A stretch of 64,000 nucleotides of DNA from Macrostomum lignano (taxonomy: Eukaryota): the NCBI GenBank assembly GCA_002269645.1, contig NIVC01003134.1, forward strand, positions 1 through 64,000, written 5' to 3'. The notes beneath the pieces were generated by a model. That model was not told where the DNA came from, searched no databases, and worked only from the letters and a program-made list of their open reading frames with translations. Made by a program: the position numbers and the translations under genes. This document shows, in pieces, positions 1 through 28,227 of the stretch (its first letter is position 1; each line of letters begins with the position of its first letter).

Positions 1-1893
1 TACATTCAGCGGACCGGATCTGCGTACAGCGAGCGGGTGACCGAGCAGCTGTGACGGGTTGCTGGGACGCCAACTGCACAGGGTCCGGTCAGGCCCGGGC
101 AGCCAAACTCGACAGGCTTCAAGCCTATGAGCAGCTGGCTGTGAAAGCTTTCCGAGAGTGCGCCTTGCTAGAAACAACCCTTGAAGACTGGAGCTTCATG
201 GAATGCTGCTGGCCAACGGAGCCGAGATTCTGGACGAAATTGCAGATCGCGCGATTAAAGGATTGAATATGCGGCAACAGCTGAGACTCGAACAGCTGAT
301 GCCGGCACAGTCGGCAAAGAGCTTCATCAGCCCGATGATTGTTATACCAGGCGTTGCGAACGGCTGGCAGACCGGCAATTTTGCTGACGTCTAACGATAA
401 TTTTCATGGTCTCAAAGTTGTCGGGCCGTTGTTAAGAAATCTGCCGTTTCAGGCCTACAGAATGATGCGATTGCTGCAGCTTAGATCACGCGGCGGCAGT
501 CTGTTTGGCCTTATACGACGTGCTCAATCCGACCTGCTTCTGTGGAATGATCCCTGCAACCGAACCGCAGAAAGGGTTGTTGCAGACGAATTACCTGTAC
601 AGACGGTGGGCGACGCTAAGCGGCTGCTTCGGCGAGCCAACTTAACCTTCGGTTCGACGAGTTTCTGCGGCTGAACCTTCAGTTGTCGGACATCCGCCTG
701 CTGATGATTTGACACCGCTATGCTGCCAGATACGAAATCTTTTCTGCGTACCGTTTGCGTTCTAGAAAAATGCGGTAGGCGATTCACAGAGCTGCCTAAA
801 CTGATCATACTCAACCAAATCTGCGTGCTGGGCGCTGCAATCTTTTCAACTCCAAAAAATGCCAAATGTTTGGACGTTCTATTTGGAAAAGTAAGAAGCG
901 AGTCATCGAGTTCGACTGTCAACTTTGAAGGAGCATTTCGCCACTGCTGCACGGTCGCTACGCCAGGATGTTAAAAGAGGAGCGTCTCGCAGTTGAAGCT
1001 GAAATCTTTGATATTTTCCGCCGAATCAAGACGGTCTACGCGTCGGCATTGGAGTCACAGACTTGGATTCCTGAGCCCGACAAGGCCGTGTTGAAGCGAC
1101 GACTGCAGCAAACTAAGTTGAGTTTTTTCACAGAGCAAGTCAGCGAGACTGCTCTGGTGCAGCATTTTGGCGAAGCGTTTGACTCGATGCCACCCAGAGG
1201 ATGCACAATATTAGTTAGCCCGGCTTGCTTTCTAGTCCGAGCTTTGGCTCTTCAACATTACCTGATCTTTCGAACAATGGAGGAAACTTTTGACCAGGAA
1301 TCGCCGCATTATAACGCATATCAGAAGGCGGTGATTCTGACGCCAGCTTTCTTAGAATATCCGCATTATCTGTCAGACCAGCCAGCGGCAGTCAGTGTCG
1401 GTACTCAAGCGCTGGTGCTCGCTCACGAGCTCACGCACGCTGTATTTGGTTCATTCAATCAACATGACGATGGTATGTAAACGCCTCATATTGTGCCCGA
1501 CTCCAGGAGAAGCACGCTTGCCTCAGACAAAGTCTGCTTCTCCGACTGGGCTTCAACAAGACCAACGTTAAGGAGGACTTCGCAGACAGGATCGGTCTGT
1601 CGGTGACTATCGAACTTCTAGCTGAGTCGGGCATCGACCAACAACTTCCAGGATTCATGGAGCGCTACTCACCGCAGCAGCTGCTCTACATTGCCAGCCT
1701 GCGGACTTTTTGCTCGAAGAGTAGCCAAGAGTTCCTACATCACTTCATGGAGACTGGCAGCGAGACGTGGAGCCACACGCCAGGCAGACTGCGCATACGG
1801 AGCCTCATCTCCGGCGATGACGACTTCTTCAGAGCGTTCGGCTGTCCGACTTCCCAGCCCGAGCTCGCCTCCGATGAGTGCCGTCTGTGGTAA
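1..1893 (+). pseudogene. M13 family (neprilysin/ECE-like) zinc metallopeptidase, intronless, broken by several frameshifts (pseudogene or consensus errors); 5' part probably outside the window
   Basis: ORF 968-1480 has LAHELTH (HExxH). The +1 frame is open from 1468: WYVNASYCARLQEKHACL...TNVKEDFAD (ExxxD third zinc ligand)...SHTPGRLRI...FFRAFGCP...CRLW-stop, the typical M13 C-terminus. Upstream pieces lie in other frames (203-394, 720-974). Confidence 0.8.
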
Positions 1894-3291
1894 AAAGAGA
1901 CAGTAAAATGAAAAATAAGCATCCCCTATGTGTTGATGGCCTCCTCAATATCCTGTTGCAAAGAATGAATTTTCAACAGAGTTTGGATATTCAATAGAAC
2001 AATATGAAGAACTTAGGCGTGCCTATTTTTCATTCATTGTTTTGCACTGAATAAAGTTTTTTCTCGTGAAGTACAATCCTGTAATTAGCAAAATCAAAAG
2101 ATGCTACTCAAGCTTATAGATTTCGAAATATGCGGCCGGTTTTTTGCAGAAAAAAGATCGTAATTTTAATTTTTGACGGTAACGGAAGTCCAAACTTTCG
2201 GACTTCCGAATAGTGAATGAACCAAGTAGATTCCAGGGAGAGTCTTCTTCTTGAATTTTGCCAGACAGAAAAGCATGGATAGGCATGCGCAAGATTCTCA
2301 GTATCCTACTTTTCAGATTTTAAATATACTCAGCAAAATTAAAAAGTCACCAGCTTTGAGAGTGCGGAGTAAATTCTAGGCCCAGTATTGACTTTTGAGT
2401 GACGCTATTGCGCCACGCGATGCAGAGTTGGGCTGGTATACTCGACTTATATATTCGACAACTATTTATTGTACTCGTAGAAAGGGACTAAAACGCCAGA
2501 GCAGTACAGAGAGAAGACAAAATAACGCCAGAGCAGCGCAACCCCTATGAAACACACAAATCAACCCAGCAAACAACCCAGACACATTTCACACGCCACC
2601 ACAATTTCGAATAGAGGCAACATGTGGCATGAAAAGCATATCGAATAAGGACTTTCTGTAAAACAGACAGTTAAACTACTTTACTCAGGAATTATTGTAG
2701 AAAGTGCATCGGATTTAGATTATAGGCACGTGATATTACATAGCTTTTCTGTGGAGAATTACTGAATAGTCATTGGTAGAAAACCCAGACAATAGATCCA
2801 AATTTTATTTCCTTCTGAAACTAGTGGATAAAACAAGTGCACTACGAGAATATTACACTTATGCATTACTTTATTTTGCTCACAGAATAAGAAAAAAAGC
2901 TGATTTTTTGGCCGATACAAAGAGTAAGTCAGTTCAGAAATTTATAGTATAATTTTTTAAGCCTCGACAGGAAGCGTCACCATGCAAAAACAGAGATTCC
3001 GTTTTAAATTCAAAAAGCTTCAGTGAATCGCTATCAACTTTTTCAAGCTGAATTTGCTGATGTATTCATGCGATATGGTTTTTCACCGGCAGTGCGGGAC
3101 TGCATTAGGCAGCCTAGCTGCGTATGAAACAATGCATTTTGAGCAGGGCTTGACGCTGCATGGTGGGAGAGTCGGCAGTTAGCTGCCTATATACGTCCGG
3201 TTTGAGCCTCTCAACTCGCATCTCCACCACCGATTTGTGCGGAAAACGTAATAGAGATTATTATTGAATGAGAAAAAATGGCTGGCTTTGT

Positions 3292-3932
3292 TAACAGTTC
3301 CTGCTCGGTCAGTGGAAACTGGGTTTGTCTAACAGTTCTGCTCGGTCAGTGGAAACTGGGTTTATCTAACAGTTCCTGCTCGGTCAGTGGAAACTGGGTT
3401 TGTCTGGCAGTTCCTTCTCGGTCAGTGGAAACTGGGTTTGTCTAGCAGTTCCTGCTCGGTCAGTGGAAACTGGGTTTGTCTAGCAGTTCCTTCTCGATCA
3501 GTGGAAACTGGGTTTGTCTAACAGTTCCTGCTCGATCAGTGGAAACTGGGTTTGTCTAACAGTTCCTGCTCATCAGTGGAAACTGGGTTTGTCTAACAGT
3601 TCCTTCTCGGTCAGTGGAAACTGGGTTTGTCTAACAGTTCCTTCTCGTCAGTGGAAACTGGGTTTGTCTAGCAGTTCCTTCTCGATCAGTGGAAACTGGG
3701 TTTGTCTAGCAGTTCCTTCTCGGTCAGTGGAAACTGGGTTTGTCTAACAGTTCCTGCTCGATCAGTGGAAACTGGGTTTGTCTAGCAGTTCCTTCTCGGT
3801 CAGTGGAAACTGGGTTTGTCTAGCAGTTCCTTCTCGGTCAGTGGAAACTGGGTTTGTCTAGCAGTTCCTTCTCGGTCAGTGGAAACTGGGTTTGTCTAAC
3901 AGTTCCTTCTCGGTCAGTGGAAACTGGGTTTG
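3292..3932. repeat. 38-bp minisatellite, about 17 copies
   Basis: Unit CAGTTCCT(G/T)CTCGGTCAGTGGAAACTGGGTTTGTCTA(A/G), head-to-tail, no spacers. Confidence 0.95.
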
Positions 3933-4706
3933 ATGCTTTAGCATCAAGGGGCGCCAGAGCCATTAAAAACACTTGTTTAAACACTGTTTGCATAGCTGGC
4001 TTCATTAGACAATGCACTGGTTTTAACAAAATTTTTCTACAAGACGTTTTTATTTGAGAACAATTTTGACGAGTTACGAGTGCTTAAAAGAGCTTATCGA
4101 TACATTATGGTCGTTTTTGCCCAAGCAGTCAATCAATATTATCAGCATAGCGCCAAGTGAGGATTGACACAGATAGCCAGACCGCGGCCGTTTCACACTG
4201 GATCAAATGGATTTTGGCCATAGACATTCTCAGCCGACAGGACTGTCGAGCGTTTATTTAAACCTCGCTTCAATACGCCTTAGGCCTGCTAGATGCAATA
4301 TGGCTAGAAATACTAGAAACGCGTTTCCAGATAGATGGTTACTTTGCCTAGAAAATGCAGTGTTAATATAATAGATTCTTAGAAAAATTATTACAATATA
4401 AATCATACATTTTTGACATGTTAAAAAAAGAACATTAAATTTGTAAGTAAATTGTTTTCAAACTCAAGTAGATTGATATGAAATAGTTCGCTTTGCGATT
4501 AGCGAATGTTTAAAATAGAGATCTTATGACGCGTTTTGATTTATAGCACATTAAAGTTGCCTAGCAGCAATCGTCACACTGCACTTCCAGTCAGCGAGCC
4601 CAGATTCTCCTTCCATTGCCAAAACTGCTGCTGTTGTTGAAGATGCAATTGCTGCTGCTGCTGCTGCTGGAGATGCTGCTGGATGAGGCTGATCGAACGC
4701 CGATGC

Positions 4707-5133
4707 TCAAGACTGTTGAACCATCGCTGACGATCTAGAAAGATAATTTTTGTGTAGTCGTTTATAAAATCAAAATTCTACAGATAAATGTTTATTATTC
4801 TACTATTTAAACTAGTAGTAAGACGGCATGTGTATTTTATTTTTAAAAGAAACTGCTGAAGGAAACGTAATTATTATTTTCAGTAGCGTCAATAACTAAA
4901 AGAATCAGTAATTAGGGCTATCGTTAAAATATCAACCATGCTCCTGACACTTACGCAACACGCATACCTACCTGTTGCTCTTATCAACTAAAGCAGAAGA
5001 CGAGCAAGTTTTGTTGCTGGACAATTTTCACTGAAGAATTCATTTCGAGATAGAAAGTTCCCAGTTCCCAGCTCATTCGTTCTTTGTTCCTTTCTATTAA
5101 GAGGCTTTTTCCAGATGAATTTTCTCGTGACCC
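4707..5133 (-). CDS. Candidate terminal exons of the Notch-like gene (5133-4972 and 4734-4707)
   Basis: Acceptor CTAG|GGG at 5134, then an open frame (R)VTRKFIWKKPLNRKEQ...VDKSN, donor AG|GTAGGT at 4971 and acceptor TTCTAG| at 4735. Phases are compatible with the upstream candidate exon. No recognisable domain. Confidence 0.35.
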
Positions 5134-5504
5134 CTAGCTTAGTAAAACAAAACTGTTCAATAATTGGTGATTAAAAAGTCAAAGGGTGAGCGTGTGTACA
5201 CGCTGTACACCCTGTGTGATCGTGTGTACGAGTGCAAGCCTGCGTACAGTATGGGAGCGCTATGTATGTACTCAGGGGTCACCGGAATGGGCATAATTGC
5301 CGTCAGTACTGATTGTGGGAAGATGTAGTGCTAACAACCCGGTTGCAAATATTATTGATATATATTATTTGGAAGGCTAGGAGGTGCTAAAATCCAGCGC
5401 TAAAAAGCTGAAAACATCATATATGTCTTGCCAATGCATTTTGCAGCAAAATTTACACGATGGTCGAGCGTCATTGTACAAGCGTACAAGTGTCACAAGC
5501 GTAC

Positions 5505-5925
5505 TTCTCTTTCTTGGCTTCCACCAACAGTCGTCGCGGCTCCGCTCTGCTGCCAGCCCGCTGGGGGACGGTTCTGACGGTCCTGCAGTTGCCGGTCCCG
5601 AAGCTGCTGAACACGTAGCAGCAGTAGCAGCAGTTGTTGTTGTTGCTGCAGACATTGGCAACTCAGAGAAGTCCGAGTCAGTTGCCGGATGCAGACTCAA
5701 GCTGCCTGGCGACGAGGCCGTCTGGACAAATTTGATGGTTTTTGTAGAAAGAAGAAAACTGTTTGATGCTTGGCGATGCTTGGAGCTGATCGAAATCAGC
5801 GATTAGATGAGTTGGCGAGATAATGGGACAGGCGTTAAAAGTGATGGGCATCCTGGCATCTAATGCGGCTGCTGTCATCGGTGCTGCCAAATCTGCTTTT
5901 GGGCCTGTCAGACTCAATCTTGTGT
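5505..5925 (-). CDS. Candidate intracellular exon of the Notch-like gene (low complexity, probably frameshifted)
   Basis: Acceptor TGTAG| at 5926 joins the phase-1 end of the TM exon (G|AC = Asp) into ORF 5678-5917. ORF 5377-5700 continues in another frame to ...DDCWWKPRKR, with a possible donor A|GTACGC at 5504. Confidence 0.4.
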
Positions 5926-6178
5926 CTACACTAGACTGCTTGCTATCTTGTGCATGTTTTGCTTCTTTTATTAATAGTTGCTAACTAGATTAGCGTGAGC
6001 AATGGATACTCTGCAGAGCGTCTCTTTGCACCGAGTCTTGTTGGGTACGAGCTAGTAAAAGGCTAGGCTGGTTAGTGCGAAAGCAGAGGAAAGCAAAAAT
6101 TCTCATTTTTTCCCATTACGAGTAGTTCGAAGGCTTTTAGACTGATCTAATGATTTCGGATAGGATAGTTGGATAGTT

Positions 6179-6302
6179 GGATAGGGTCTGATGGTGTTGG
6201 ATAGGGTCTGATGGTGTTGGATAGGGTCTGATGGTGTTGGATAGGGTCTGATGGTGTTGGATAGGGTCTGATGGTGTTGGATAGGGTCTGATGGTGTTGG
6301 AT
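6179..6302. repeat. 20-bp minisatellite, 6 copies (intronic)
   Basis: Unit GGATAGGGTCTGATGGTGTT. Confidence 0.95.
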
Positions 6303-6497
6303 CGAACCTTAACTAGGCAGATGAAACCTTCTGTCGGTAGTCGCTCGTATGAGTCAGCGTTGGTTATAAGTATAGTTAATTGTAGGAAAAGTAATATGAG
6401 TTAGTTATATATAATAATATTTAATATACTATACATAAATCCATATACTAATAGCTAATCATAATGCATTTCAGAATCAAAATCGGTAGTCACTCAC

Positions 6498-8260
6498 CTG
6501 ACCCAAAGCGAGTCTCTGAGCTCGGTAGGCCATCGTAGGAACTGGAAGCTGCGCCGGTGACTGATAATGATGCGGCTGCAGCCGGTGCAGCGGCAGCGGA
6601 GAGCCGCTCAGGCTGGCAGCTGGCGGTGGAGCCATCGAGGCTGAATCCACCGTGCCAGTCGCCCGCCACAGGCGAGGCGGTCAGGCTTAGCGGCCCGTGA
6701 CTCGCGCCTGCCGACGACACCCACGGAATCTTCCTGCTTCATTGTTGCCGTCCGTCTCGGCCACGACGCCGCCTCGGCGCATGGCGCTGAGAAGGAAACC
6801 GAGCAGCAGGCCCAGCACCAGCAGGCAGGCGGCTGCCACTGCGCTGGCAGCAGGAAGCTGCCGACTCCGCCAGAGCGACTCACTCCGATCACGCCGCCGC
6901 CCCGCCGCCGCCGCCCCCGCCGCCGCTCCTGTTGCGGCCGCCACCGCTACCCGCCGCAGACAACTGGCTGTCACCGCTGCCAACCGAAGTAACCCGACGC
7001 AGCCGCAGGGGCAGCAGCAGGCGGCTGGACATGACCCCGGCCGCCACCGCCTGGGCTGCGAAGTTTGCGCTTCGATAGCAGAAATCGGTCAGCGACGCGT
7101 CTTGATTGGCGTCAGCGGCTGACGAGCTGGAAAAAATCTTGGCGTCCAAGCAAGCGTCCAGCTGGAATCTGACCAGCGATGCGTCAGCCGAGCCGGGACG
7201 GTGGCGGCCACCGGAGGCTGGACAAGTCGCAGAAGCGTGCCCAGGTTGCGGGACAGACTTCGCGTCAGCGAACGGATGGCCTCGGACGCTTCGGCTGGAG
7301 ACGCCGCCACCTCCAGTTCCAGCAGCTCGCTAGCAGCAGTTTTGTCGAGTTGGGATTCGCGCCACATCGAAGCAGTCGCGTCGGCGGATGTCTTTGAAGA
7401 CGACTGCGGCGCTGCTGCTGCCGCCGGCGACTGGGACGGCGGAGCGGCCGCCGGCTCAGCGCAGTCACCGCCGTCCAACAGACAGGCGGGACTGTCGCAG
7501 CCTCGGTCGCAGCTGCCGTCGGCGAAGTGATCGGCGCAGTAGCGATAGGGACACGGGTCCGAGTCGGGCTTCGCTCTCGCCGACAGCCGATCGTCTCGAC
7601 AGTCGCCGCCGTCGAACAGGCAGGCCTCGGTGTTGCAGACTGTGTTGCACTCGCCGTCTGCGTACACCGAGTCGCAGGCGGCCAAGCCGAGCCTCATAGC
7701 GGTGCAGTTCACCCACGGCCGAGCGCCCAGGCCGCCGCAGTCGCCCCGTCCCAGTCGCAGGCCGGCCCGCTGCAGCGCCTGTCACAGCGACCGTCGCCTG
7801 CGAGGACGTCGCAGCCGGCCTCGCGACAGCGGTTGCGCGCCTCCGCGAACGTCGGGCACCGTTCCGCGCAGGTGGGGCCGCACAGACCCGGCTGGCAGTG
7901 GCAACGAAAGCCGCCGCCAAGGCGAACCTGCCGGCAGGTTGAGGCGGCGCCGCGGCACGGCGATTCGTCGCAGGCGGAGCCGATGAACTGGCAGTGCTGA
8001 CCGGCGCGACCGGGCGGGCAGAGGCAGGCGGGACCAGCCGAGCTGTCGAAGACGCAGCGACCGCCGCCGAGACACACGACGCTGTCGCACGGGTCTACGC
8101 GTCGATGGCAGAGCGGACCGGAGAAGCCCGGCTTGCAGGTGCAGGTGAAGCTGCTCAGACGGTCGGACGGACCTCTGCGGAGGCAGCGAAGGGTGCCCGC
8201 TGGGCTGCACGGACCGAGGCTGTTCGCGCATTCACCCGTGTCACCTTGACAGTACGGGCC
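6498..8260 (-). CDS. Notch-like receptor exon: 3 EGF, 3 LNR, NOD, NODP, TM and start of the cytoplasmic tail; about 5 single-base frameshifts
   Basis: Acceptor TTGCAG|GGCCCG (GPYCQ) is in frame with the upstream GFQ. LNRs: ...GDGRCDRRCSGPACDWD[G]GDC, ADGECNTVCNTEACLFDGGDC, FADGSCDRGCDSPACLLDGGDC. NOD: IRSLTRSLSRNLGTLLRL. NODP: FCYRSANFAAQAVAA. TM: AVAAACLLVLGLLLGFLL, then MRR. Donor CAG|GTGAGT at 6497. Confidence 0.9.
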
Positions 8261-8445: not shown

Positions 8446-9016
8446 GTGGGTAACCGTAGATGGGGTGGGTGGCGGAGGATGGGGTGGGTAGCGGAGGATG
8501 GGGTGGGTAGCGGAGGATGGGGTGGGTAGCGGAGGATGGGGTGGGTAGTGGAGGATGGGGTGGGTAGCGGGGGATGGAGTGGGTAGCGGAGAATGAGGTA
8601 GGTAGCGGAGGATGGGGTGAGTAGCGGGGGATGGGGTGGGTAGCGGAGGATGGGGTGGGTAACGGAGGATGGGGTGGGTAGCGGAGGATGGGGTGGGTAA
8701 CGGAGGATGGGGTGGGTAGCGGGGATGGAGCGGGTAGCGGAGAATGAGGTGGGTAGCGGAGGATGGGGTGAGTAGCGGAGGATGGGTGGGTAACGGAGGA
8801 TGGGGTGGGTAGCGGAGGATGGGGTGGGTAGCGGAGGATGGGTGGGTAGCGGAGGATGGGGTGGGTAGCGGAGGATGGGGTGGATAGCGGAGGATGGGGT
8901 GGGTAATGGAGGATGTGGTGGGTAGGGAGGATGGGGTGGGTAATGGAGGATGTGGTGGGTAGGGAGGATGGGGTGGGTAGCGGAGGATGGGGTGGGTAGC
9001 GGAGGATGGGGTGGGT
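8446..9016. repeat. 19-bp G-rich minisatellite (intronic), copy 1
   Basis: Unit GGGGTGGGTAGCGGAGGAT. Confidence 0.95.
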
Positions 9017-9554
9017 GCTGCTGTGTTGGGCAATTAGAGAGAATTTTGGTACGAGCTACAGTGCAGAACGGGAAGAGCAAGCATAAATGACAGAGTTAAG
9101 GCGTATTGATTGCGATTGTGAGCTGGGAACAGAGGATAGAAATGAAGAGAAACAAAGGAGATGATTAACCCATTAACTAAAAATAAATAAATTAGCTATT
9201 GGAATTGGTGCAGAAAACTTTTGCGATCCGGAAATAGAATCGGATTGATACAGATACCTGGCTATCCAGAGGGTCAAAAGTGAGTCTGCTCTTCATTTAG
9301 TCTAGTCACCTTGTTTCTTCCAATCTAAGTAAACATCTGCTTTCATTAAAAACCTAAAAATAATTAGAACTTTGATCTCACAAAGGCAGGTAGCTTAGGT
9401 CAAACAGGTTGCTAAGGTGGCTGATTAAAGCGGATGATGAGGCGGCAAAAAGATCGGATTAGGGCTTAGGGAACTTCTGATGTAGGGTGGGTGACAAGTG
9501 TCAAACCTTGAGAATAGAATGAGCAGAAAACAGTGAAAAACAGAGCAACGTCCG

Positions 9555-10760
9555 GTGAGAAGTGAAGACTGCAAATTAAAGGTGTGACAGTTGACTAGGT
9601 AGCAGTGAAGAGTGACGGGTGAGGAGTGAAGAGTGACGGGTGAGAAGTGAAGAGTGACGGGTGAGGAGTGAAGAGTGACGGATGAGGAGTGAAGAGTGAC
9701 GGGTGAGGAGTGAAGAGTGACGGGTGAGGATTGAAGACTGCAAAGTAAATGTGTGACAAGTGACGGGTGAGGAGTGAAGAGTTTGACGGGTGAGGAGTGA
9801 AGAGTTTGACGGGTGAGGAGTGAAGAGTGACGGGTGAGGAGTGAAGAGTGACGGGTGAGGAGTGAAGAGTGACGGGTGAGGAGTGAAGAGTGACGGGTGA
9901 GGAGTGAAGAGTGACGGGTGAGGAGTGAAGAGTGACGGGTGAAGAGTGAAGAGTGACGGGTGAAGAGTGAAGAGTGACGGATGAGGAGTGAAGAGTGACG
10001 GGTGAGGATTGAAGACTGCAAAGTAAATGTGTGACAAGTGACGGGTGAGGAGTGAAGAGTTTGACGGGTGAGGAGTGAAGAGTTTGACGGGTGAGGAGTG
10101 AAGAGTTTGACGGGTGAGGAGTGAAGAGTGACGGGTGAGGAGTGAAGAGTGACGGGTGAGGATTGAAGACTGCAAAGTAAATGTGTGACAAGTGACGGGT
10201 GAGGAGTGAAGAGTTTGACGGGTGAGGAGTGAAGAGTTTGACGGGTGAGGAGTGAAGAGTTTGACGGGTGAGGAGTGAAGAGTGACGGGTGAGGAGTGAA
10301 GAGTGACGGGTGAGGAGTGAAGAGTGACGGGTGAGGAGTGAAGAGTGACGGGTGAGGAGTGAAGAGTGACGGGTGAAGAGTGAAGAGTGACGGGTGAAGA
10401 GTGAAGAGTGACGGATGAGGAGTGAAGAGTGACGGGTGAGGATTGAAGACTGCAAAGTAAATGTGTGACAAGTGACGGGTGAGGAGTGAAGAGTTTGACG
10501 GGTGAGGAGTGAAGAGTTTGACGGGTGAGGAGTGAAGAGTTTGACGGGTGAGGAGTGAAGAGTGACGGGTGAGGAGTGAAGAGTGACGGGTGAGGAGTGA
10601 AGAGTGACGGATGAGGAGTGAAGAGTGACGGATGAGGAGTGAAGACTTTGACGGGTGAGGAGTGAAGAGTGACGGGTGAGGAGTGAAGAGTGACGGGTGA
10701 GGAGTGAAGAGTGACGGGTGAGGAGTGAAGAGTAACGGGTGAGAAGTGAAGAGTTACGAG
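9555..10760. repeat. 21-bp minisatellite with periodic higher-order inserts (intronic)
   Basis: Unit GTGAAGAGT(TT)GACGGGTGAGGA, interrupted four times by TTGAAGACTGCAAAGTAAATGTGTGACAA; a degenerate copy of the insert lies at about 9560-9590. Confidence 0.95.
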
Positions 10761-11217
10761 TGCAGTGTGAAGAGTGTAAGAGGTAGAGTGAACTTGAAAA
10801 ATGTGAATAGCAGCGGTGAATAATAAAATTTGATCAGTAGTAAAACAGTGAAAATAGTAAAGTACACTTGATAGAGCCGAAAGTCAGGCAGACTCTGGCA
10901 AAAAGATCACGCAATAATGCTACAAAAACCTCCTGCTCATTATCCATGGACTTCGTGCTGTTTTTCCGTAGCAGAACATTTTTTGTTTGAATTAGCATCA
11001 ACTCAACTTCAGGGATGGGAAAGTTATTAAATCATTTTATAGAAAGAAAAGATATGGGCCTGTGCCCGTGCGTCTTTACTGTGCTTGCTCTGGCTCTCAG
11101 ATCCTTGGGGAAGCGTATTTCCCGAAAACGGATGGACTTTATAAATGGAGCCGTTACCTAATAAGAATTAAGTGACTAATAGTGCATTGCAATGTCAGGT
11201 ACGTTTGTAGTATTTGG

Positions 11218-11745
11218 TAGGACGGGGTGGGTAACGGAGGATGGGGTGGGTAGCGGAGAATGGGGTGGGTAGCGGAGGATGGGGTGGGTAGCGGAGAATG
11301 TGGTGGGTAGCGGAGGATGGGGTGGGTAGCGGAGAATGTGGTGGGTAGCGGAGAATGGGGTGGGTAGCGGAGGATGGGGTGGGTAGCGGAGAATGGGGTG
11401 GGTAGCGGAGGATGGGGTGGGTAGCGGAGAATGGGGTGGGTAGCGGAGGATGGGGTGGGTAGCGGAGAATGGGGTGGGTAGCGGAGGACGGAGTGGGTAG
11501 CGGAGGATGGGGTGGGTAGCGGAGGATGGGGTGGGTAGCGGAGGATGGGGTGGGTAGCGGAGGATAGGGTGAATAGCGAAGGATGGGGTGGATAGCGGAG
11601 GATGGGGTGGGTAGCGGAGGATAAGGTGGGTAGCGGAGGATGGGGTGGGTAGCGAAGGATGCGGTGGCTGGCGGGGGATGTGGGGTGGGTAGCGGAGGAT
11701 GGGGTGGGTAGCGGAGGATGGGGTGGGTAGCAGAGGATGGGATGG
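11218..11745. repeat. 19-bp G-rich minisatellite (intronic), copy 2
   Basis: Same unit as 8446-9016, with GGAGAAT variants. Confidence 0.95.
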
Positions 11746-12006
11746 GGCTGATAGTGAAAAATGACCATTTTGTAAGAAAGAGGGGCAAGAGGACTCTTGG
11801 GCTATTAGAAGATCAATCCTAAGGAGGATTTTTCAGGCTCTACCAGTTAAACAGATTAATTAGCTAAATAAAAATGGTGTGTATAAAATATACATGGAGG
11901 ACGTGTAGTATCTGAAAATAAATTTTAATTGTTGCAGATCTTTCCTGAAATTCAAGTCTCCATGTGCTGTAATGCACCTGTCTCCAATCCTCACTCAGCC
12001 ACTCAC

Positions 12007-12545
12007 CTGAAAGCCGGGTTTGCAGGTGCACCTGAACCCTCCAGGCTCGTCAACGCACTCGCCCCCATTCAGACAGGCCCCGCCGAACTGCTCGCATTCG
12101 TTCACGTCGATCTGGCAGCGACTGCCGGTGAAACCGCGTCGACACTGGCACACCGGAAGTTCGACGCCAACCAACTGGAAACAGCGGCCGCCGTTCAGAC
12201 ACCAGGACTGCCACCGGCTGGAATTGCAGGGTTCCGGCTGGACTGTCGGCAAGCCGGTCGGCTGCGATAAATGCTCGCAGTATCGGCCTCGAAATCCCGC
12301 ATGACAACGGCAGTTGAATCCGCCAGCTGCTGTCGGCAAGCAGCGGCCTCGGCCAAGACACGATGATTCGGTGCACGGGTTCAGCAGCTGCTCGCAGCGA
12401 AGGCCCAACCAGCCGGACGCGCAGTCGCATACGAATGTGCCGGTGGCGGCGAAGCTTCTGCACAGGCCACCGTGAAGGCACGGCTGGTTCGAGGCGCAGG
12501 GATCTGACACCGATTCTGACTGCGGTGGGACTTCGCAGCGGGTGC
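12007..12545 (-). CDS. Notch-like receptor exon, 4 EGF repeats (one Ca-binding)
   Basis: Acceptor CTGCAG|GC (phase 1, G-TRCEV) and donor CAG|GTGAGT at 12006. Repeats: DPCASNQPC..., NPCTESSC..., EPCNSSRWQSWC..., DVNECEQFGGACLNGGECVDEPGGFRC. Confidence 0.95.
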
Positions 12546-12589
12546 CTGCAGAGGAATTTGGCGAGGGTGAGTATTTTGTGATGGTTTTG

Positions 12590-13070
12590 CGGTGGGTGGT
12601 GGGTGAGGGTCGGCTGTGGGGTGGCGGGTGAGGGGGTCGGCTGTGGGGTTGTGGGTGAGGGGGTTGGCTGTGGGGTGGTGGGTGAGGGTGTTGGCTGTGG
12701 GGTGGTGGGTGATGGGGTTGGCTGTAGGTGGTGGGTGACGGGGTTGGCTGTAGGTGGTGGGTGACGGGGTCGGCTGTGGGGTGGCGGGTGAGGGGGTCAG
12801 CTGTGGGGTTGTGGGTGAGGCGGTTGGCTGTGGGGTGGTGGGTGAGGGTGTTGGCTGTGGGGTGGTGGGTGATGGGGTTGGCTGTAGGTGGTGGGTGACG
12901 GGGTTGGCTGTAGGTGGTGGGTGACGGGGTTGGCTGTGGGGTGGTGGCTGAGGGGTTGGCTGTGGGGTGGTGGGTGGAGGGGGTCGGCTGTGGGGTGATG
13001 GGTGAAGGGGTTGGCTGTGGGTTGGTGGGTGTGGAGGTTGGCTGTGGGGTGGTGGTGAGGGGGTTGGCTG
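12590..13070. repeat. 27-bp G-rich minisatellite next to the exon acceptor
   Basis: Unit GGGTGAGGGGGTTGGCTGTGGGGTGGT. Confidence 0.9.
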
Positions 13071-13864
13071 TAAATTAGTTAATTTCACTAACGTCCCCTA
13101 GAGTGCTTGAGGGAGTCCTCAGTCCTCTAACAGCTGTGACTTAAAATGTTTTTTTGCTTTCTCTAGTCAGCTTGTAGCAGTTCTTTTTTCAATTTCAGCA
13201 CGTTCTAGAAGAGAGTGTTTCGCTGTCTGGGCACTGAATTGCCATTAAATTTGAGGTCCACATCGGCAACTGCATATTAAAGATTTCCCAAAGGAATTGG
13301 TATTTGCAGTTGAAGGCTTGGCTCGAAAGCTTTGCAAAGTGACAGAGCTTGAGTAGGATCGAGTTTCAAATCCTCTCTTTTTCGCTGAGATGGGGAGCAT
13401 TCAGTTCTTCCCAAAATAGTACCCTAGTTATAGTTTTTTCCCCATTCCTGCTTAACTCTAATGGGGAACTGTTCAGCAGAAAAACAGTTTCTTTTTCATA
13501 TTGTTGTCACTTTTTTGCATGCTGTTTCTATTAATTCCAGCCATCAGCCCCATTAGCAGCAACGCTTTTTTCTTCCTGTTCTTAGGGGATAAAAATCTGT
13601 TGGGATCAGAGAGGATTCCGGGTTAGGGGTCTGGGCTGAAATGGCTTGATTTTGATATTTTTTTGTCGGATCAATTCTTGCATGTTTTCCCGAACAAGGC
13701 CAACATCAGCTTGCAGCTTCCTCAGTTCGGCCCCTGGCCTTCTGCCCTTCCCCTCCGGATGCGCTGGTCCCCGCTCTGTCAATTATCCCCTCCGAGGCGA
13801 GGGGAAACCGGATAAATGGTTGCCAGATTGGAGCTCGGGTCACTGCAAAGTGCTGGCTGTCTCT

Positions 13865-14390
13865 GTGTCTGACTCTCTGACACCCTGACTCTCTGACACT
13901 CTGACTCTCTGACACCCTGACTCTCTGACACCCTGACTCTGACACCCTGACTCTCTGACACCCTGACTCTCTGACACCCTGACTCTCTGACACCTTGACT
14001 CTCTGACACCCTGACTCTCTGACACTCTGACTCTCTGACACCCTGACTCTCTGTCACCCTGACTCTCTGACACCCTGACTCTCTGACACCCTGACTCTCT
14101 GACACCCTGACTCTCTGACACCCTGACTCTCTGACACCCTGACTCTCTGACACTCTGACTCTCTGACACCTTGACTCACTGACACCTTGACTCACTGACA
14201 CCCTGACTCTCTGACACCCTGACTCTCTGACACCCTGACTCTCTGACACCCTGACTCTCTGACACCCTGACTCTCTGACACCCTGACTCTTTGACACCTT
14301 GACTCTCTGACACCCTGACTCTCTGACACTCTGACTCTCTGACACCCTGACTCTCTGACACCCTGACTCTCTGCCACCACTCTCTGACTT
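13865..14390. repeat. 16-bp minisatellite (intronic)
   Basis: Unit CTGACTCTCTGACACC. Confidence 0.95.
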
Positions 14391-15239
14391 TCCCAGAGCC
14401 TCTAAATCTTCTGACTGTAAATCTCTGAGACTCTCTGACTTTCTCAAACTCTGACATTTTGACACCCTAGCTGTGTGAGCATGTGTATGAGTGCGGGCCT
14501 GCGTGCAGTATTGGCGCCTTTGTACGAGTTTGCTTAATCTTGCAGCCTGAGGAGAGTTGGAGGCGGGGGTCCAGGTCTTCTGCAGGGGAAATAAGCCAGC
14601 TTGTTTCGGAAGTCCCTGAGCCAACCCGAATGTCCGGGAGACTATTTTCTTCAAATTAAAATAATTACTTCATGAAAAACGTAGACACGCGCCGTTAGAC
14701 TAAGGATTTCAGATTTTGCCTCAAAGTTTTAGCCACTCGGACCAAATATTTGAGCTTCGAATAGGACTCGAAAGAGACTGCATGTCAGGATGTATATTGT
14801 GTGTCATATTTCTGTGGCATCATTTTTAACAGAAATCGTGACTGGAGAGACACAAATTTGCAGAACTGCCTGCCGCCTTCAACCCTCAGTTGCCACTTAA
14901 TTATTTAACACCACATATCGAGGAGAAAGGCACATCAGCCTAGTTATCGAGCTAAAAGGCACACAGAGAGAGAGAGAGAGAGAGTGGGCACAGACTGGGA
15001 CAGAGAGGCAAAGAGCGGATCGATGAAGAGCTCGAGAGCGCAGCAGATTGGGTTGTCAATCTTGGCATCAGCTGCGATTGTTGGTTAAAAGGCAGACAGG
15101 CGGACAGTGATTCTTGAATTTGTCACTAGTAAAATTTCGATTCGGCTTAAATATAATGGGGGTGTTTTGTGCGTTCGAAATTTCAGTAATGCGATGCTAA
15201 GTTTTAAGTTCGTGAAGCTTCGAGCTTATGAAATTTTCA

Positions 15240-16296
15240 GTTTGTGAAGTTTAGAGTTTGTGAAGTTTAGAGTGTGTGTAGCTTCGAGTTTGTGAAGTTT
15301 AGAGTGTGTGAAGTTTAGAGTTTGTGAAGTTTAGAGTGTGTGTAGCTTCGAGTTTGTGAAGTTTAGAGTTTGTGAAGTTTAGAGTTTGTGAAGTTTAGAG
15401 TTTGTGAAGTTTAGAGTTTGTGAAGCTTCGAGTTTGTGAAGTTTAGAGTTTGTGAAGTTTAGAGTGTGTGAAGTTTAGAGTTTGTGAAGTTTAGAGTTTG
15501 TGAAGTTTAGAGTGTGTGAAGTTTAGAGTGTGTGAAGTTTAGAGTTTGTGAAGTTTAGAGTGTGTGTAGCTTCGAGTTTGTGAAGTTTAGAGTTTGTGAA
15601 GTTTAGAGTTTGTGAAGTTTAGAGTTTGTGAAGTTTAGAGTTTGTGAAGTTTAGAGTTTGTGAAGTTTAGAGTGTGTGTAGCTTCGAGTTTGTGAAGTTT
15701 AGAGTTTGTGAAGTTTAGAGTTTGTGAAGTTTAGAGTTTGTGAAGTTTAGAGTTTGTGAAGTTTAGAGTTTGTGAAGTTTAGAGTTTGTGAAGTTTAGAG
15801 TTTGTGAAGTTTAGAGTTTGTGAAGTTTAGAGTGTGTGAAGTTTAGAGTGTGTGAAGTTTAGAGTTTGTGAAGTTTAGAGTTTGTGAAGTTTAGAGTTTG
15901 TGAAGTTTAGAGTTTGTGAAGTTTAGAGTTTGTGAAGCTTCGAGTGTGTGAAGTTTAGAGTTTGTGAAGTTTAGAGTTTGTGAAGTTTAGAGTTTGTGAA
16001 GTTTAGAGTGTGTGAAGTTTAGAGTTTGTGAAGTTTAGAGTTTGTGAAGTTTAGAGTTTGTGAAGTTTAGAGTTTGTGAAGTTTAGAGTTTGTGAAGCTT
16101 CGAGTTTGTGAAGCTTCGAGTTTGTGAAGCTTCGAGTTTGTGAAGCTTCGAGTTTGTGAAGCTTCGAGTTTGTGAAGCTTCGAGTTGAGAAGTTTAGAGT
16201 TTGTGAAGTTTAGAGTTTGTGAAGTTTCGAGTTTGTGAAGCTTCGAGTTTGTGAAGTTTCGAGTTTGTGAAGCTTAGAGTTTGTGAAGTTTAGAGT
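15240..16296. repeat. 16-bp minisatellite (intronic)
   Basis: Unit GTTTAGAGTTTGTGAA, variants GCTTCGAG and GTGTGTA. Confidence 0.95.
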
Positions 16297-16750
16297 ACCG
16301 CTGCATGAATATGTTGGAGTTCGAGTTCGATTTTTACAAAAATATTCACCGAAACCAGTTATAACAAGCAGTTAACTTCAATAATTCAATCACGCTGGTT
16401 CAAGGCAGACCCCAATCAGAGTGACATTGTTAGAAAGAAATAGGACGAAACAATAAAATCAATGTGTACGCGACTTCGTTCAAGAATTCAGACGAATATT
16501 ATGGAAGTTGGAGAAACAAGTATCAATAGAAAATTCCTTTGTTATATGGAAATATAGATTTATATAAAAACGCATAGCCTTTTCTACACTTTTTAATTTT
16601 TGTAATTTTGTAACTTCATTTCGGATCAGGTTTTCATTTGGGATCTGTCTGCATGCCTGTCATTCCATCTGTCTGTCTACCATTCTGTCTTTACCTCCTA
16701 CTCTATTTTCATCTCCATCTCCATCCCCCATTGTCCGCCTCTCCTTTCAC

Positions 16751-17211
16751 CTGAAAATCCGTCAACGCAGCGACATTTGCCGTCGAAATCGCCGCTGCAG
16801 ACGCCACCGTTGTAGCAGCCGCCGTTCAGCCGACAGTCGATCGCTGTTGAAGGTCGAGACGGTGACAAAGGCAGCTCGCAGTGCCGACCCTCGAAGCCGG
16901 CCGGGCACTGACAGCTGTACCCGCCCTCAGTGTTGACGCAACTGCCTCCGTTGGCGCACGGAGCCGACAGGCACTCGTTGACGTCAATGCTGCACGTGTC
17001 GCCTACAAAACCAGACGGACAGAGGCACTGGAAGCCCCAGCTGGTGGAGTTCACCACGCATGCGCTGGCCGGATGGCACGGGCTGTGCTGGCACGGATCG
17101 GGCAGCTCGCAGCGGTCGCCGACGAAGCCCTGCGGACAGGCGCACGTCAGCGAGCCGGCGGTGCAGACACCGCCGTGTTGGCAGGGCTCGTGGCGGCAGT
17201 CCGATGAAGCC
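16751..17211 (-). CDS. Notch-like receptor exon, 4 EGF repeats (one Ca-binding); exact acceptor uncertain (17222, 17216 or 17212)
   Basis: DCRHEPCQHGGVC..., DPCQHSPC..., DVNECLSAPCANGGSCVNTEGGYSCQC, DCRLNGGC...CVDGFS. Donor CAG|GTGAAA at 16750, phase 1, matches the next exon. Confidence 0.92.
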
Positions 17212-17237
17212 CTGACTGCGGCTGCGGGGGGGGGGTG

Positions 17238-17669
17238 AGGGGACATTGTCTGAAGTCTGAGGGACATTATCTGAGGGACATTGTCTGAGGGACATTGTCT
17301 GAGGGACATTGTCTGAGGGAAATTTTCTGATGGACATTGTCTGAGGGACATTGTCTGAGGGATATTGTCTGAGGGACATTGTCTGAGGGACATTTTCTGA
17401 TGGACATTGTCTGAGGGACATTGTCTGAGGGACATTTTCTGAGGGACATTGTCTGAGTGACATTGTCTGAGGGACATTGTCTGAGGGACATTTTCTGATG
17501 GACATTGTCTGAGGGACATTGTCTGAGGGATATTGTCTGAGGGACATTGTCTGAGGGACATTTTCTGAGGGACATTGTCTGAGTGACATTGTCTGAGGGA
17601 CATTGTCTGAGGGACTTTGTCTGAGGGACATTGTCTGAGGGACATTGTCTGAGGGACATTGTCTGAGGG
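17238..17669. repeat. 14-bp minisatellite abutting the polypyrimidine tract of the EGF exon
   Basis: Unit GAGGGACATTGTCT. Confidence 0.95.
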
Positions 17670-18375
17670 AAGGAAGTCTGTCACACTGTTTGTCATATTG
17701 CTTGTCATATTGTCTGTCATACTGTCTGTCAACCTATCTGTTTGTTCAGTGTCTCATTGAGTCATTTGAGAGTTTTATCAATTGGCTCGCACGCTACGAG
17801 AGTGTTTAGTATTTTTGTCTGCATGACATTGTATAAACCCATCAAACCAACATCTTCGACGCACTTCATCATGGCGTCATCAAAATCGATCAGCTGTTCA
17901 ATAAAACATTTTTTACAATGCTGCAAGCAAGCAAAGAGAAAAAGGATTAACCCTGACCGTAAAATTCCTTTGGGATTTGGTAGTTCATGGAATAGAGAGG
18001 CATAACAGCGTTTCTATTGGCAAGTCCGCCTACCGAACTCATCACTGAACTGCTGGTCAGGAATTCTGTCTGTAATTTTTAATTACAGGTCGAACACCTA
18101 CTTAGAACTGTTACTAAACAGAGGCGTAGGATGGGGACAGAGATGCGAGGGGAAAGATAGTCAAAGAAGGACTCAAACAGGCCGATTCATTGGCATGCTG
18201 GATCTGCATCGTAGCATTCGGTCCCCAGAGAGTGGCCATGTGCTGTGCGAAAGTCGCATGACTAGATGACTAGATTAGCATCAGGCACACACCTTTCCCT
18301 GTGAACTCTCCTCATCTGATAGCATGTATAAGCATTTCTGCGAATTTTATTCTGCTTGCGGAACATTGTGTTTAT

Positions 18376-24274: not shown

Positions 24275-24676
24275 TGCTCACATGAAGGTGTATCTCTATG
24301 TGTTTGTTGACGCCATAGCAACAACTAGATTGGTTGAACTGCAATTTTGTTCACGTGCAATTACACACAGAGAAAGAGAGAATCTCTGTACGAATATTTA
24401 ATACAGCTGGAGCCAGATGCTTGGACTGTGGCGTCGATATGCGACTGCTGATGCTGCGCTGGCTTCTCGTCGATTCGCTGACGCCAGGGGGGCCAATAAC
24501 GGCCGCCGGCCATAGGCAAGAGCTGAGGCAAGGGCAGGTGGCCGAGGATTGTTTGCCTTAATCCGATAATAGGATAGAAATGCAGAAGTGCTCTGCATGC
24601 TTTATTAAATTGAGTTTTATGAATGCATTTCTAACTCCAGAAAGTGTTTTATGCTCAAACAAAAGTTTTATTCATA

Positions 24677-28227
<3,551 letters not shown>

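What the first reader, a model, noticed from the sequence alone, without database searches (positions are those of the whole stretch)
6985..7075. Furin consensus RLRR sits exactly at the Notch S2 (ADAM) cleavage position
Seen, in one uninterrupted frame (ORF 6889-7149): FAAQAVAAGVMSSRLLLPLRLRR|VTS, with RLRR at 7005-6994. Knowledge: human NOTCH1 reads ...LGSLNIPYKIEA|VQS (recalled), with S2 at A|V, and furin cleaves after R-X-[KR]-R. The P...V register is identical, and no furin site is evident in the short NOD-NODP linker where S1 normally lies. Inference: this receptor may replace ADAM shedding with proprotein-convertase cleavage, constitutive or force-gated. With the ANK-less tail this suggests a rewired Notch-type proteolytic switch.
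Basis: partly seen in the sequence, partly recalled or inferred. Interest (0 to 1): 0.8.

Follow-up and report, generated by a model that had tools for sequence, protein, structure and literature searches.

The report
Arg-rich S2 strand in flatworm Notch-like gene
A truncated Notch-like gene of the flatworm Macrostomum lignano really does carry an RLRR motif where Notch receptors are normally cut by ADAM proteases, but the motif sits in a predicted folded strand, is followed by an unfavourable valine and is missing from the sister Notch gene, so nothing here shows it is a furin-operated switch.

Summary
RLRR is encoded at 7005-6994 on the minus strand, in the frame stated. That frame is used by three independent gene models and fits codon-position GC content. 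The window is Macrostomum lignano DNA, and the gene is a lineage-specific Notch-family paralogue (UniProt A0A1I8HWF1, A0A1I8FNQ7, A0A1I8IH08). It has EGF repeats, three LNR modules, an HD domain, a transmembrane helix and a short tail. No RAM or ANK sequence lies before a convergent neighbouring gene. An AlphaFold model matches the NOTCH1-3 NRR crystal structures (TM 0.70-0.75). A 49-sequence alignment puts RLRR|V on NOTCH1 (V/K)IEA|V, the S2 position.

The motif is unusual for the family. Basic residues are rare in those columns, and only one other lineage, the nematode Panagrellus redivivus (RVKR), has such a motif there.

The furin-switch inference is not supported. The motif lies in a confidently predicted beta-strand of a closed NRR. 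P1' is Val, which is unsuitable for furin. The canonical Notch paralogue in the same genome reads PLIG|VS. The protein has 9% Arg and 1% Lys. There is no intracellular effector domain to release.

The window copy also has three 1-nt deletions that break the reading frame, most likely assembly errors.

Low-to-moderate interest.

The parts
16929..17222 (-). Upstream EGF-repeat exon of the same gene
   Evidence: tblastn of P0001 residues 99-196, 97% identity
12007..12543 (-). EGF-repeat exon (about 4.5 EGF), one open frame
   Evidence: tblastn of P0002 residues 1-179, 100% identity
7868..8260 (-). Start of the terminal coding block, after the acceptor ...ccttgcag|GGC; holds the last three EGF-like repeats
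   Evidence: Pfam EGF E 4.4e-5
7704..7828 (-). LNR-A and the A-B linker. A missing nucleotide at about 7747 (GGGG where P0001 needs GGGGG) breaks CDWDG|GDC.
   Evidence: Pfam LNR E 1.7e-22, 3 stretches
7599..7676 (-). LNR-B
7461..7553 (-). LNR-C
7197..7328 (-). HD-N half (strand, helix, strand). Ends at a missing nucleotide at about 7199 (ATV|PGSADA).
6982..7182 (-). HD-C half: strand, Cys...Cys loop with a 23-residue insert, helix, final strand
   Evidence: Pfam NODP E 7e-4, below the curated cut-off
6994..7005 (-). RLRR (cgg ctg cgt cgg), in the last HD beta-strand at the position homologous to Notch S2; next residue is Val (6993-6991)
6852..6981 (-). Gly/Ala/Ser-rich juxtamembrane linker made of GGC/GCG repeats. 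The reading frame is uncertain: 1 nt is missing at about 6903, and a 26-nt stretch at 6883-6858 is treated as an intron in P0001. The three gene models disagree here.
   Evidence: pLDDT below 50 for model residues 297-325
6783..6851 (-). Transmembrane helix AASAVAAACLLVLGLLLGFLLSA
   Evidence: (helix 328-354)
6690..6782 (-). Short basic cytoplasmic tail MRRGGVVAETDGNNEAGRFRGCRRQARVTGR, up to a stop codon in this frame; no RAM (WxP) motif and no ANK

Best explanation
The window holds a Macrostomum lignano gene for a divergent, lineage-specific member of the Notch family. Its architecture is several EGF repeats, three LNR modules, an HD (NOD/NODP) domain, a long Gly-rich linker, one transmembrane helix and a cytoplasmic tail of about 30 residues with no RAM or ANK. 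The LNR-HD part is predicted to fold as a closed, Notch-type negative regulatory region. RLRR forms the first half of the last HD beta-strand, LRLRRVTSV. That strand corresponds to the one carrying the ADAM (S2) site in NOTCH1, and the last Arg lies on the P1 Ala.

I infer that RLRR is most likely not a working furin site. It is better read as an Arg-rich version of a sequence-variable, alternating (Leu in, Arg out) strand, in a protein whose GC-rich codons give 9% Arg and 1% Lys. If the protein is shed at all, the step should still be gated by opening of the NRR. Because no effector domain is attached, the protein would act as a ligand-binding, adhesion or decoy molecule rather than as a transcriptional switch.

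The frame breaks in the window copy are most likely consensus indel errors of a long-read assembly.

Shown here: sequence, frame, domain content, fold prediction, alignment register, rarity in the family, absence from the paralogue, absence of RAM and ANK. Inferred: burial of the strand, lack of furin cleavage, decoy-type role, error origin of the frame breaks.
For: Organism and gene: P0001 is 98% identical to the stitched translation, P0002 92% and P0003 84%, all from M. lignano. Domains: Pfam LNR E 1.7e-22 with 3 stretches, EGF, and NODP at E 7e-4; the LNR region matches the NOTCH1-3 NRR chains at E 1e-22 to 1e-25. Fold: AlphaFold2 gives mean pLDDT 78.6 and pTM 0.69, with the strand at model residues 287-293 and a mean pLDDT of 95 for block 281-290. 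Foldseek finds 4zlp, 3eto, 2oo4 and 3l95 at E about 1e-14, with target-normalised TM 0.70-0.75 over about 290 columns. Register. The S2 site is buried in the closed NRR (PMC3415683). Val at P1' is unsuitable for furin (PMC5129557). The canonical paralogue (L001, which has a RAM-like LWCPPGF and ANK exons) reads TLPLIG|VSAQ. Composition is R 9.0%, K 1.0%. No RAM or ANK: tblastn with the paralogue's RAM and ANK peptides gives only E above 1; no Pfam family matches any open segment of 40 aa or more on the minus strand of 1-6800; a convergent Peptidase_M13 gene ends at about 1890. Frame breaks: the window and P0001 agree in 511 of 512 codons but differ by three 1-nt deletions. The paralogue locus and the neighbouring M13 gene also show frame changes inside exons.
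Against: The motif is rare at this place. Basic residues occupy the three Arg columns in only 4/48, 3/47 and 2/47 other Notch lineages. RX[KR]R occurs there in only one other lineage. The chance of it arising at that exact residue is about 1e-3. So composition alone is a weak explanation. The S1 loop is absent, which leaves RLRR as the only convertase-type motif in the ectodomain. The furin P1' rule comes from mammalian enzymes. No transcript evidence was available, so the 3' end of the gene and the linker frame are not certain.
Confidence: 0.6

Rival explanations
1. One reading: RLRR is a working proprotein-convertase site that replaces ADAM cleavage at S2. Cleavage would be either constitutive in the secretory pathway or exposed only when ligand pulling opens the NRR.
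For: The register matches S2 exactly. It is the only RX[KR]R in the ectodomain, and the placement is unlikely by chance. No S1 loop or S1 motif is present. The same columns carry RVKR in Panagrellus redivivus Notch, A0A7E4UU52, which could point to a recurrent solution.
Against: The motif sits in a high-confidence beta-strand of a closed NRR-like fold, not in an exposed loop of the kind that carries the S1 site. P1' is Val (PMC5129557). It is absent from the canonical paralogue in the same genome and from Panagrolaimus, the nearest relative of Panagrellus in the set, which reads VRVYEARV. There is no RAM or ANK, so no Notch-type output. The strand lies about 38 residues from the membrane.
Confidence: 0.1
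2. The copy in the window is a decaying pseudogene, so the motif has no function.
For: There are at least three frame breaks inside 1.6 kb of coding sequence. The three gene models use three different frames for the linker and tail. No RAM or ANK is present. No gene with exactly the P0001 product is on record in the contig collection, and no NCBI-named protein appeared among the close hits.
Against: The differences from P0001 are three 1-nt deletions against at most one amino-acid change in 512 codons. That is the signature of consensus indel errors, not of neutral decay. All LNR and EGF cysteines and the two HD cysteines are intact. The GC3 codon signal is preserved. Other genes in the same assembly material show similar frame changes.
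Confidence: 0.15
3. The Arg-rich strand has another role. It could be an electrostatic latch against the acidic, Ca-binding LNR cap that stabilises autoinhibition. Or it could be a site for a different Arg-specific sheddase, for example a trypsin-like membrane serine protease, once the NRR opens.
For: In LRLRRV, Leu falls on the columns that are hydrophobic across the family and Arg on the variable polar columns, as expected for a strand with one core face and one outward face. LNR modules are rich in Asp.
Against: This is purely inferential. No coordinates were available to check contacts, and there is no conservation outside near-identical copies.
Confidence: 0.12

Closest known systems
Negative regulatory region of human NOTCH1, NOTCH2 and NOTCH3 (PDB 3ETO, 3L95, 2OO4, 4ZLP)
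   Same: Three LNR modules cap an alpha/beta HD domain. The predicted fold superposes with TM 0.70-0.75. The last HD strand aligns residue for residue with the S2 strand.
   Different: There is no S1 loop; the HD-N/HD-C connection is about 12 residues with no basic residue. The S2 strand reads LRLRR|V instead of YKIEA|V. A 23-residue insert lies between the two HD cysteines. The linker to the membrane is about 38 residues. At sequence level the HD is undetectable outside M. lignano.
Canonical Notch paralogue of M. lignano (BOX15_Mlig029643g1 / A0A1I8FU46; contig NIVC01002279.1)
   Same: Same genome, same EGF-LNR-HD-TM layout, 38-41% identity over the EGF and LNR part.
   Different: The paralogue has a RAM-like LWCPPGF and ANK exons 5.8 and 8 kb downstream of its transmembrane exon. 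It has an intron inside HD-C. Its S2 strand is TLPLIG|VS, with no convertase motif. It does carry GRRRPRP in an inserted loop just upstream.
Panagrellus redivivus Notch (A0A7E4UU52)
   Same: It carries R-V-K-R in the same four alignment columns as RLRR, and it also has a long insert between the HD cysteines.
   Different: It is a nematode protein and not an orthologue. P1' is Ala. The related Panagrolaimus protein has VRVYEAR at the same place, so the motif is not conserved even there.
S1 furin site of mammalian Notch
   Same: The motif is of the R-X-[KR]-R type and lies in the HD domain.
   Different: By established knowledge (not tested here), S1 lies in a long disordered loop between the HD-N and HD-C halves and is cut constitutively in the trans-Golgi. 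RLRR lies in a structured strand about 70 residues further on, and the corresponding loop is missing in this protein.

Membership tests
Notch receptor family | Tandem EGF-like repeats in the ectodomain | tested here: met
   Pfam EGF and hEGF hits; EGF exons at 17222-16929, 12543-12007 and 8260-7868
Notch receptor family | Three Lin-12/Notch repeats | tested here: met
   Pfam PF00066 E 1.7e-22, 3 stretches; phmmer against NOTCH1-3 NRR chains E 1e-22 to 1e-25; all LNR cysteines invariant in alignment A1
Notch receptor family | Heterodimerisation (NOD/NODP) domain packed under the LNRs | tested here: met
   Met by predicted fold: Foldseek target TM 0.70-0.75 to NRR crystal structures over about 290 columns. 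By sequence the match is only sub-threshold: NODP 19.9 bits against a cut-off of 25, and no significant PDB hit with the HD alone.
Notch receptor family | Single transmembrane helix after the NRR | tested here: met
   Predicted helix 328-354, encoded at 6851-6783
Notch receptor family | RAM region with a WxP motif after the membrane | tested here: not met
   No WxP-type motif in any of the three frames after the transmembrane helix. tblastn with the paralogue's RAM peptide gives only E above 1.
Notch receptor family | Ankyrin repeats in the intracellular domain | tested here: not met
   No ANK by tblastn or Pfam in the 6.7 kb downstream. A convergent Peptidase_M13 gene ends at about 1890. Exons lying beyond that gene cannot be formally excluded without a cDNA.
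Furin / proprotein-convertase substrates | R-X-[KR]-R at P4-P1 | tested here: met
   RLRR at 7005-6994
Furin / proprotein-convertase substrates | P1' residue is not aliphatic hydrophobic | tested here: not met
   P1' is Val; the rule is quoted in PMC5129557 (Nakayama 1997; Tian 2009)
Furin / proprotein-convertase substrates | Site lies in an exposed, flexible segment | tested here: not met
   Predicted beta-strand 287-293, with mean pLDDT 95 for block 281-290, inside an NRR-like fold. Solvent exposure itself could not be computed because no coordinates were available.
Furin / proprotein-convertase substrates | Demonstrated cleavage | not testable with these tools
   Needs expression, inhibitors and N-terminal sequencing
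Furin / proprotein-convertase substrates | Motif conserved in orthologues | tested here: inconclusive
   Identical in three near-identical M. lignano copies, absent from the paralogue. No orthologue from another species was found among 1.84 billion representative proteins.

The most novel reading that the evidence does not exclude
A Notch-type mechanosensor whose gated strand carries a proprotein-convertase site instead of an ADAM site. Pulling open the NRR would expose RLRR to a cell-surface furin-like enzyme. The design would have arisen independently in a flatworm Notch-like protein and in a nematode Notch (RVKR in Panagrellus). In the flatworm it would be used for force-dependent shedding of a receptor that has no transcriptional domain.
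Probability: 0.07. Interest if true: 0.7.

Novelty: new variant of a known kind. Interest (0 to 1): 0.28.

Why it matters
If RLRR were a gated convertase site, it would be the first natural example showing that the protease acting at S2 can be swapped while the NRR mechanosensor is kept. Receptor engineers do this deliberately. It would also show a Notch NRR used for shedding without nuclear signalling. As the evidence stands, the value is more modest. The analysis documents a RAM- and ANK-less Notch-like paralogue with a complete NRR in a regeneration model organism. It shows that the S2 strand tolerates very different sequences. It also flags that this locus, like its neighbours, carries frame-breaking single-nucleotide deletions that corrupt the public gene models.

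Tried and rejected
1. phmmer of the HD region alone against PDB sequences gave no Notch hit; the best matches were glycerol dehydrogenases at E 0.15. The register therefore had to come from a family alignment and the fold prediction.

2. The second word-indexed protein search, with the NRR-to-tail query, was swamped by low-complexity Gly and Ala words. It returned only two irrelevant LNR proteins, so that search was wasted.

3. The exhaustive HMMER search found 348 relatives, but apart from the gene's own cluster they matched the LNR part of the query. No orthologue was available to test conservation.

4. Looking up the DNA that encodes P0001 failed because it is not on record. The window could therefore only be compared with the gene models at protein level.

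5. I considered real introns as the cause of the frame changes and rejected this for about 7747 and about 7199. The protein sequence of P0001 is continuous across both points and needs exactly one extra base at each. The 26-nt GT...AG stretch at 6883-6858 is left open.

6. A weak RAM-like tblastn hit at 126-34 (E 5.5) was rejected. It lies in the region of the plus-strand M13 peptidase gene and is not significant.

7. Burial of RLRR could not be measured because the structure tool returns no coordinates.

8. Two reviews of Notch evolution held nothing on flatworm ANK-less Notch or on convertase motifs at S2.

Full report
**Observation.** The ORF 6889-7149 (86 aa) is in the mechanical ORF list with the quoted peptide.

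**What the locus is.** A stitched translation of the GC-rich block 8260-6690 hits three Macrostomum lignano predicted proteins. These are A0A1I8HWF1 (P0001, 98% identity), A0A1I8FNQ7 (P0002, named 'Notch receptor 3', 92%) and A0A1I8IH08 (P0003, 84%). A more distant paralogue pair, BOX15_Mlig029643g1 (P0004) and A0A1I8FU46 (P0005), scores 38-41%. The window is therefore flatworm nuclear DNA. The gene lies on the minus strand, with EGF exons at 17222-16929 and 12543-12007 and a terminal coding block from 8260. Its introns are filled with minisatellite arrays.

**Frame integrity.**
- The terminal block cannot be translated in one frame.
- A frameshift-aware alignment shows that the window and P0001 agree in 511 of 512 codons.
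- The window lacks one nucleotide at about 7747 (CDWDG|GDC, GGGG where GGGGG is needed), at about 7199 (ATV|PGSADA) and at about 6903 (poly-Gly).
- Indels without substitutions are the signature of long-read consensus errors rather than pseudogene decay.
- The paralogue locus in assembly GCA_002269645.1 and the neighbouring M13 peptidase gene show similar in-exon frame changes.
- Its frame is nevertheless the right one. All three gene models read SSRLLLPLRLRRVTSVGS, and third-position GC is highest in this frame over 7200-6900.
- The Gly/Ala-rich stretch between the motif and the membrane (6981-6852) is read differently in every model, so its true frame and length are uncertain.

**Domains and fold.** Pfam finds three LNR modules (E 1.7e-22), EGF repeats and a sub-threshold NODP match (E 7e-4, 19.9 bits against a cut-off of 25). 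The LNR part matches the NOTCH1-3 NRR chains at E 1e-22 to 1e-25. The HD part alone matches nothing in PDB by sequence. It also has no detectable relative outside M. lignano among 1.84 billion representative proteins.

I predicted the structure of the LNR-A-to-TM segment with AlphaFold2, using an alignment of 24 Notch NRRs. The model has mean pLDDT 78.6 and pTM 0.69. The HD elements run strand, helix, strand, strand, helix, strand, followed by 38 low-confidence residues and a transmembrane helix. Foldseek returns only Notch NRR structures as significant hits (4zlp, 3eto, 2oo4, 3l95, 7abv). These score E about 1e-14 with target-normalised TM 0.70-0.75 over about 290 columns. The protein therefore has a complete Notch-type negative regulatory region.

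**Register.** I aligned the HD-C-to-TM segments of 47 Notch-family proteins, P0001 and my spliced model of the paralogue with MAFFT. In that alignment LLLP-LRLRRVT aligns with LNMP-YVIEAVT of a NOTCH1-type protein and LDFP-YPLRDVR of NOTCH3. In mouse Notch1 the S2 site lies between Ala1710 and Val1711 (PMC7600097). On that basis the last Arg of RLRR falls on P1 and the Val on P1'. In the model RLRR is residues 286-289, the DSSP strand is 287-293, and block 281-290 has mean pLDDT 95.

**How unusual it is.**
- RLRR is the only RX[KR]R in the ectodomain.
- Shuffling gives 0.30 motifs per ectodomain and about 5e-4 at that exact residue.
- Across the family the three Arg columns hold a basic residue in only 4/48, 3/47 and 2/47 sequences.
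- The only other lineage with RX[KR]R there is Panagrellus redivivus Notch (GVRVKRAL). Its relative from Panagrolaimus reads GVRVYEAR.
- The motif is therefore atypical, but it appears sporadically rather than as a conserved feature.
- The protein has 9.0% Arg and 1.0% Lys, in keeping with its GC-rich codons. This raises the background for Arg motifs but does not fully explain the placement.

**Is it a furin site?** Four points argue for it: the motif itself, the exact register, the absence of any S1-type loop or motif (the HD-N/HD-C connection is QPPVAATVPGSADA), and the nematode parallel.

Five points argue against it.
- The motif is part of a confidently predicted strand in a closed NRR. 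In the solved NRRs the S2 site is buried under the LNR cap (PMC3415683). The S1 site that furin does cut lies in a long disordered loop (established knowledge).
- P1' is Val, and an aliphatic P1' residue is described as unsuitable for furin (PMC5129557, citing Nakayama 1997 and Tian 2009).
- The canonical paralogue in the same genome has TLPLIG|VSAQ here. I derived this from locus L001 by joining ...DYAAQ|gtgagt...ccccag|ALAADL.... It does have GRRRPRP in an inserted loop eight residues upstream, but that is not a good convertase site because Pro follows the last Arg.
- The strand is about 38 residues from the membrane helix in the model.
- There is nothing for a 'switch' to release, as the next section shows.

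**Tail.** After the transmembrane helix the frame gives MRRGGVVAETDGNNEAGRFRGCRRQARVTGR and then a stop. No WxP motif occurs in any frame. The paralogue, by contrast, has GRLWCPPGF directly after its helix, and ANK exons 5.8 and 8 kb downstream. Using those peptides as tblastn queries against the window gives only E above 1. No Pfam family matches any open minus-strand segment of 40 aa or more in 1-6800. A plus-strand Peptidase_M13 C-terminal domain occupies 929-1890 and runs to the end of the profile. The two genes are therefore convergent, and the Notch-like gene should end between 6690 and about 1900. The 'ANK-less' statement is supported. The only caveat is that a cDNA was not available.

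**Interpretation.** The best-supported reading has three parts. First, this is a lineage-specific, RAM- and ANK-less Notch-family protein with an intact NRR. Second, RLRR is an Arg-rich version of the variable S2 strand: the Leu residues fall on the family's hydrophobic columns and the Arg residues on the polar ones. Third, any shedding would still depend on opening of the NRR. Without an effector domain the protein would more likely act in ligand binding, adhesion or as a decoy. Pseudogene status of this copy (about 0.15) and another role for the Arg strand, such as an electrostatic latch or a different Arg-specific sheddase (about 0.12), are the other rivals.

**Novelty and score.** The gene already exists as uncharacterised predicted proteins in UniProt. 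The ANK-less architecture and the atypical S2 strand make it a new variant of a known kind, not a new kind. A specialist would find the motif placement curious but not surprising without cleavage data. Interest 0.28.

**Dead ends.** One protein search was lost to low-complexity words. P0001's DNA is not on record. Two Notch-evolution reviews held nothing relevant.

Noticed in passing
window 929-1890, plus strand: C-terminal catalytic domain of a neprilysin-like Peptidase_M13 gene (HELTH zinc motif). It is convergent with the Notch-like gene. The match is split over two reading frames, 929-1477 and 1468-1890, so it probably carries a single-nucleotide frame error as well.
   Followed up: partly
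window 8459-17670, also 19264-44843 and 56581-59392: The introns and flanks are packed with minisatellite arrays of 4-38-nt units. Examples are 8459-9016, 9604-10792, 15199-16296, a 3.4-kb (ATAG)n at 24674-28037 and a 2.8-kb 24-mer array at 56581-59392. Many produce long spurious ORFs.
   Followed up: partly
L001 20311-20353 and about 20400: The canonical M. lignano Notch paralogue in assembly GCA_002269645.1 also changes frame inside the exon between LNR-B and LNR-C. It reads AAY where LNR-C needs a Cys (CDTAAYLFDGGDC). Its public gene models (P0004, P0005) are truncated or mis-spliced as a result.
   Followed up: partly
L001 21238-21345: The canonical paralogue has a roughly 14-residue insert (SASSTAAGRRRPRPS) with a basic cluster just before its S2-equivalent strand. 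It also has an intron, filled with tandem repeats, inside HD-C; the window gene has no intron at that place.
   Followed up: partly
P0041 (Panagrellus redivivus Notch, A0A7E4UU52), segment GVRVKRALAEP: A nematode Notch carries RVKR in the same alignment columns as RLRR, with Ala at P1'. The related Panagrolaimus sequence does not. This is an independent candidate for the same hypothesis.
   Followed up: partly
window 6883-6858, minus strand: A 26-nt GTGAGT...GCAG stretch between the Gly-rich linker and the transmembrane helix is treated as an intron in model P0001. It is very short for a spliceosomal intron, and the other two models read through it in different ways.
   Followed up: no
window 7242-7170 (HD cysteine loop), and P0041, P0050, P0053: The loop between the two HD-C cysteines is 23 residues long in the window protein. 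It is similarly long in three nematode Notch proteins, against about 2-9 residues in the rest of the alignment.
   Followed up: no
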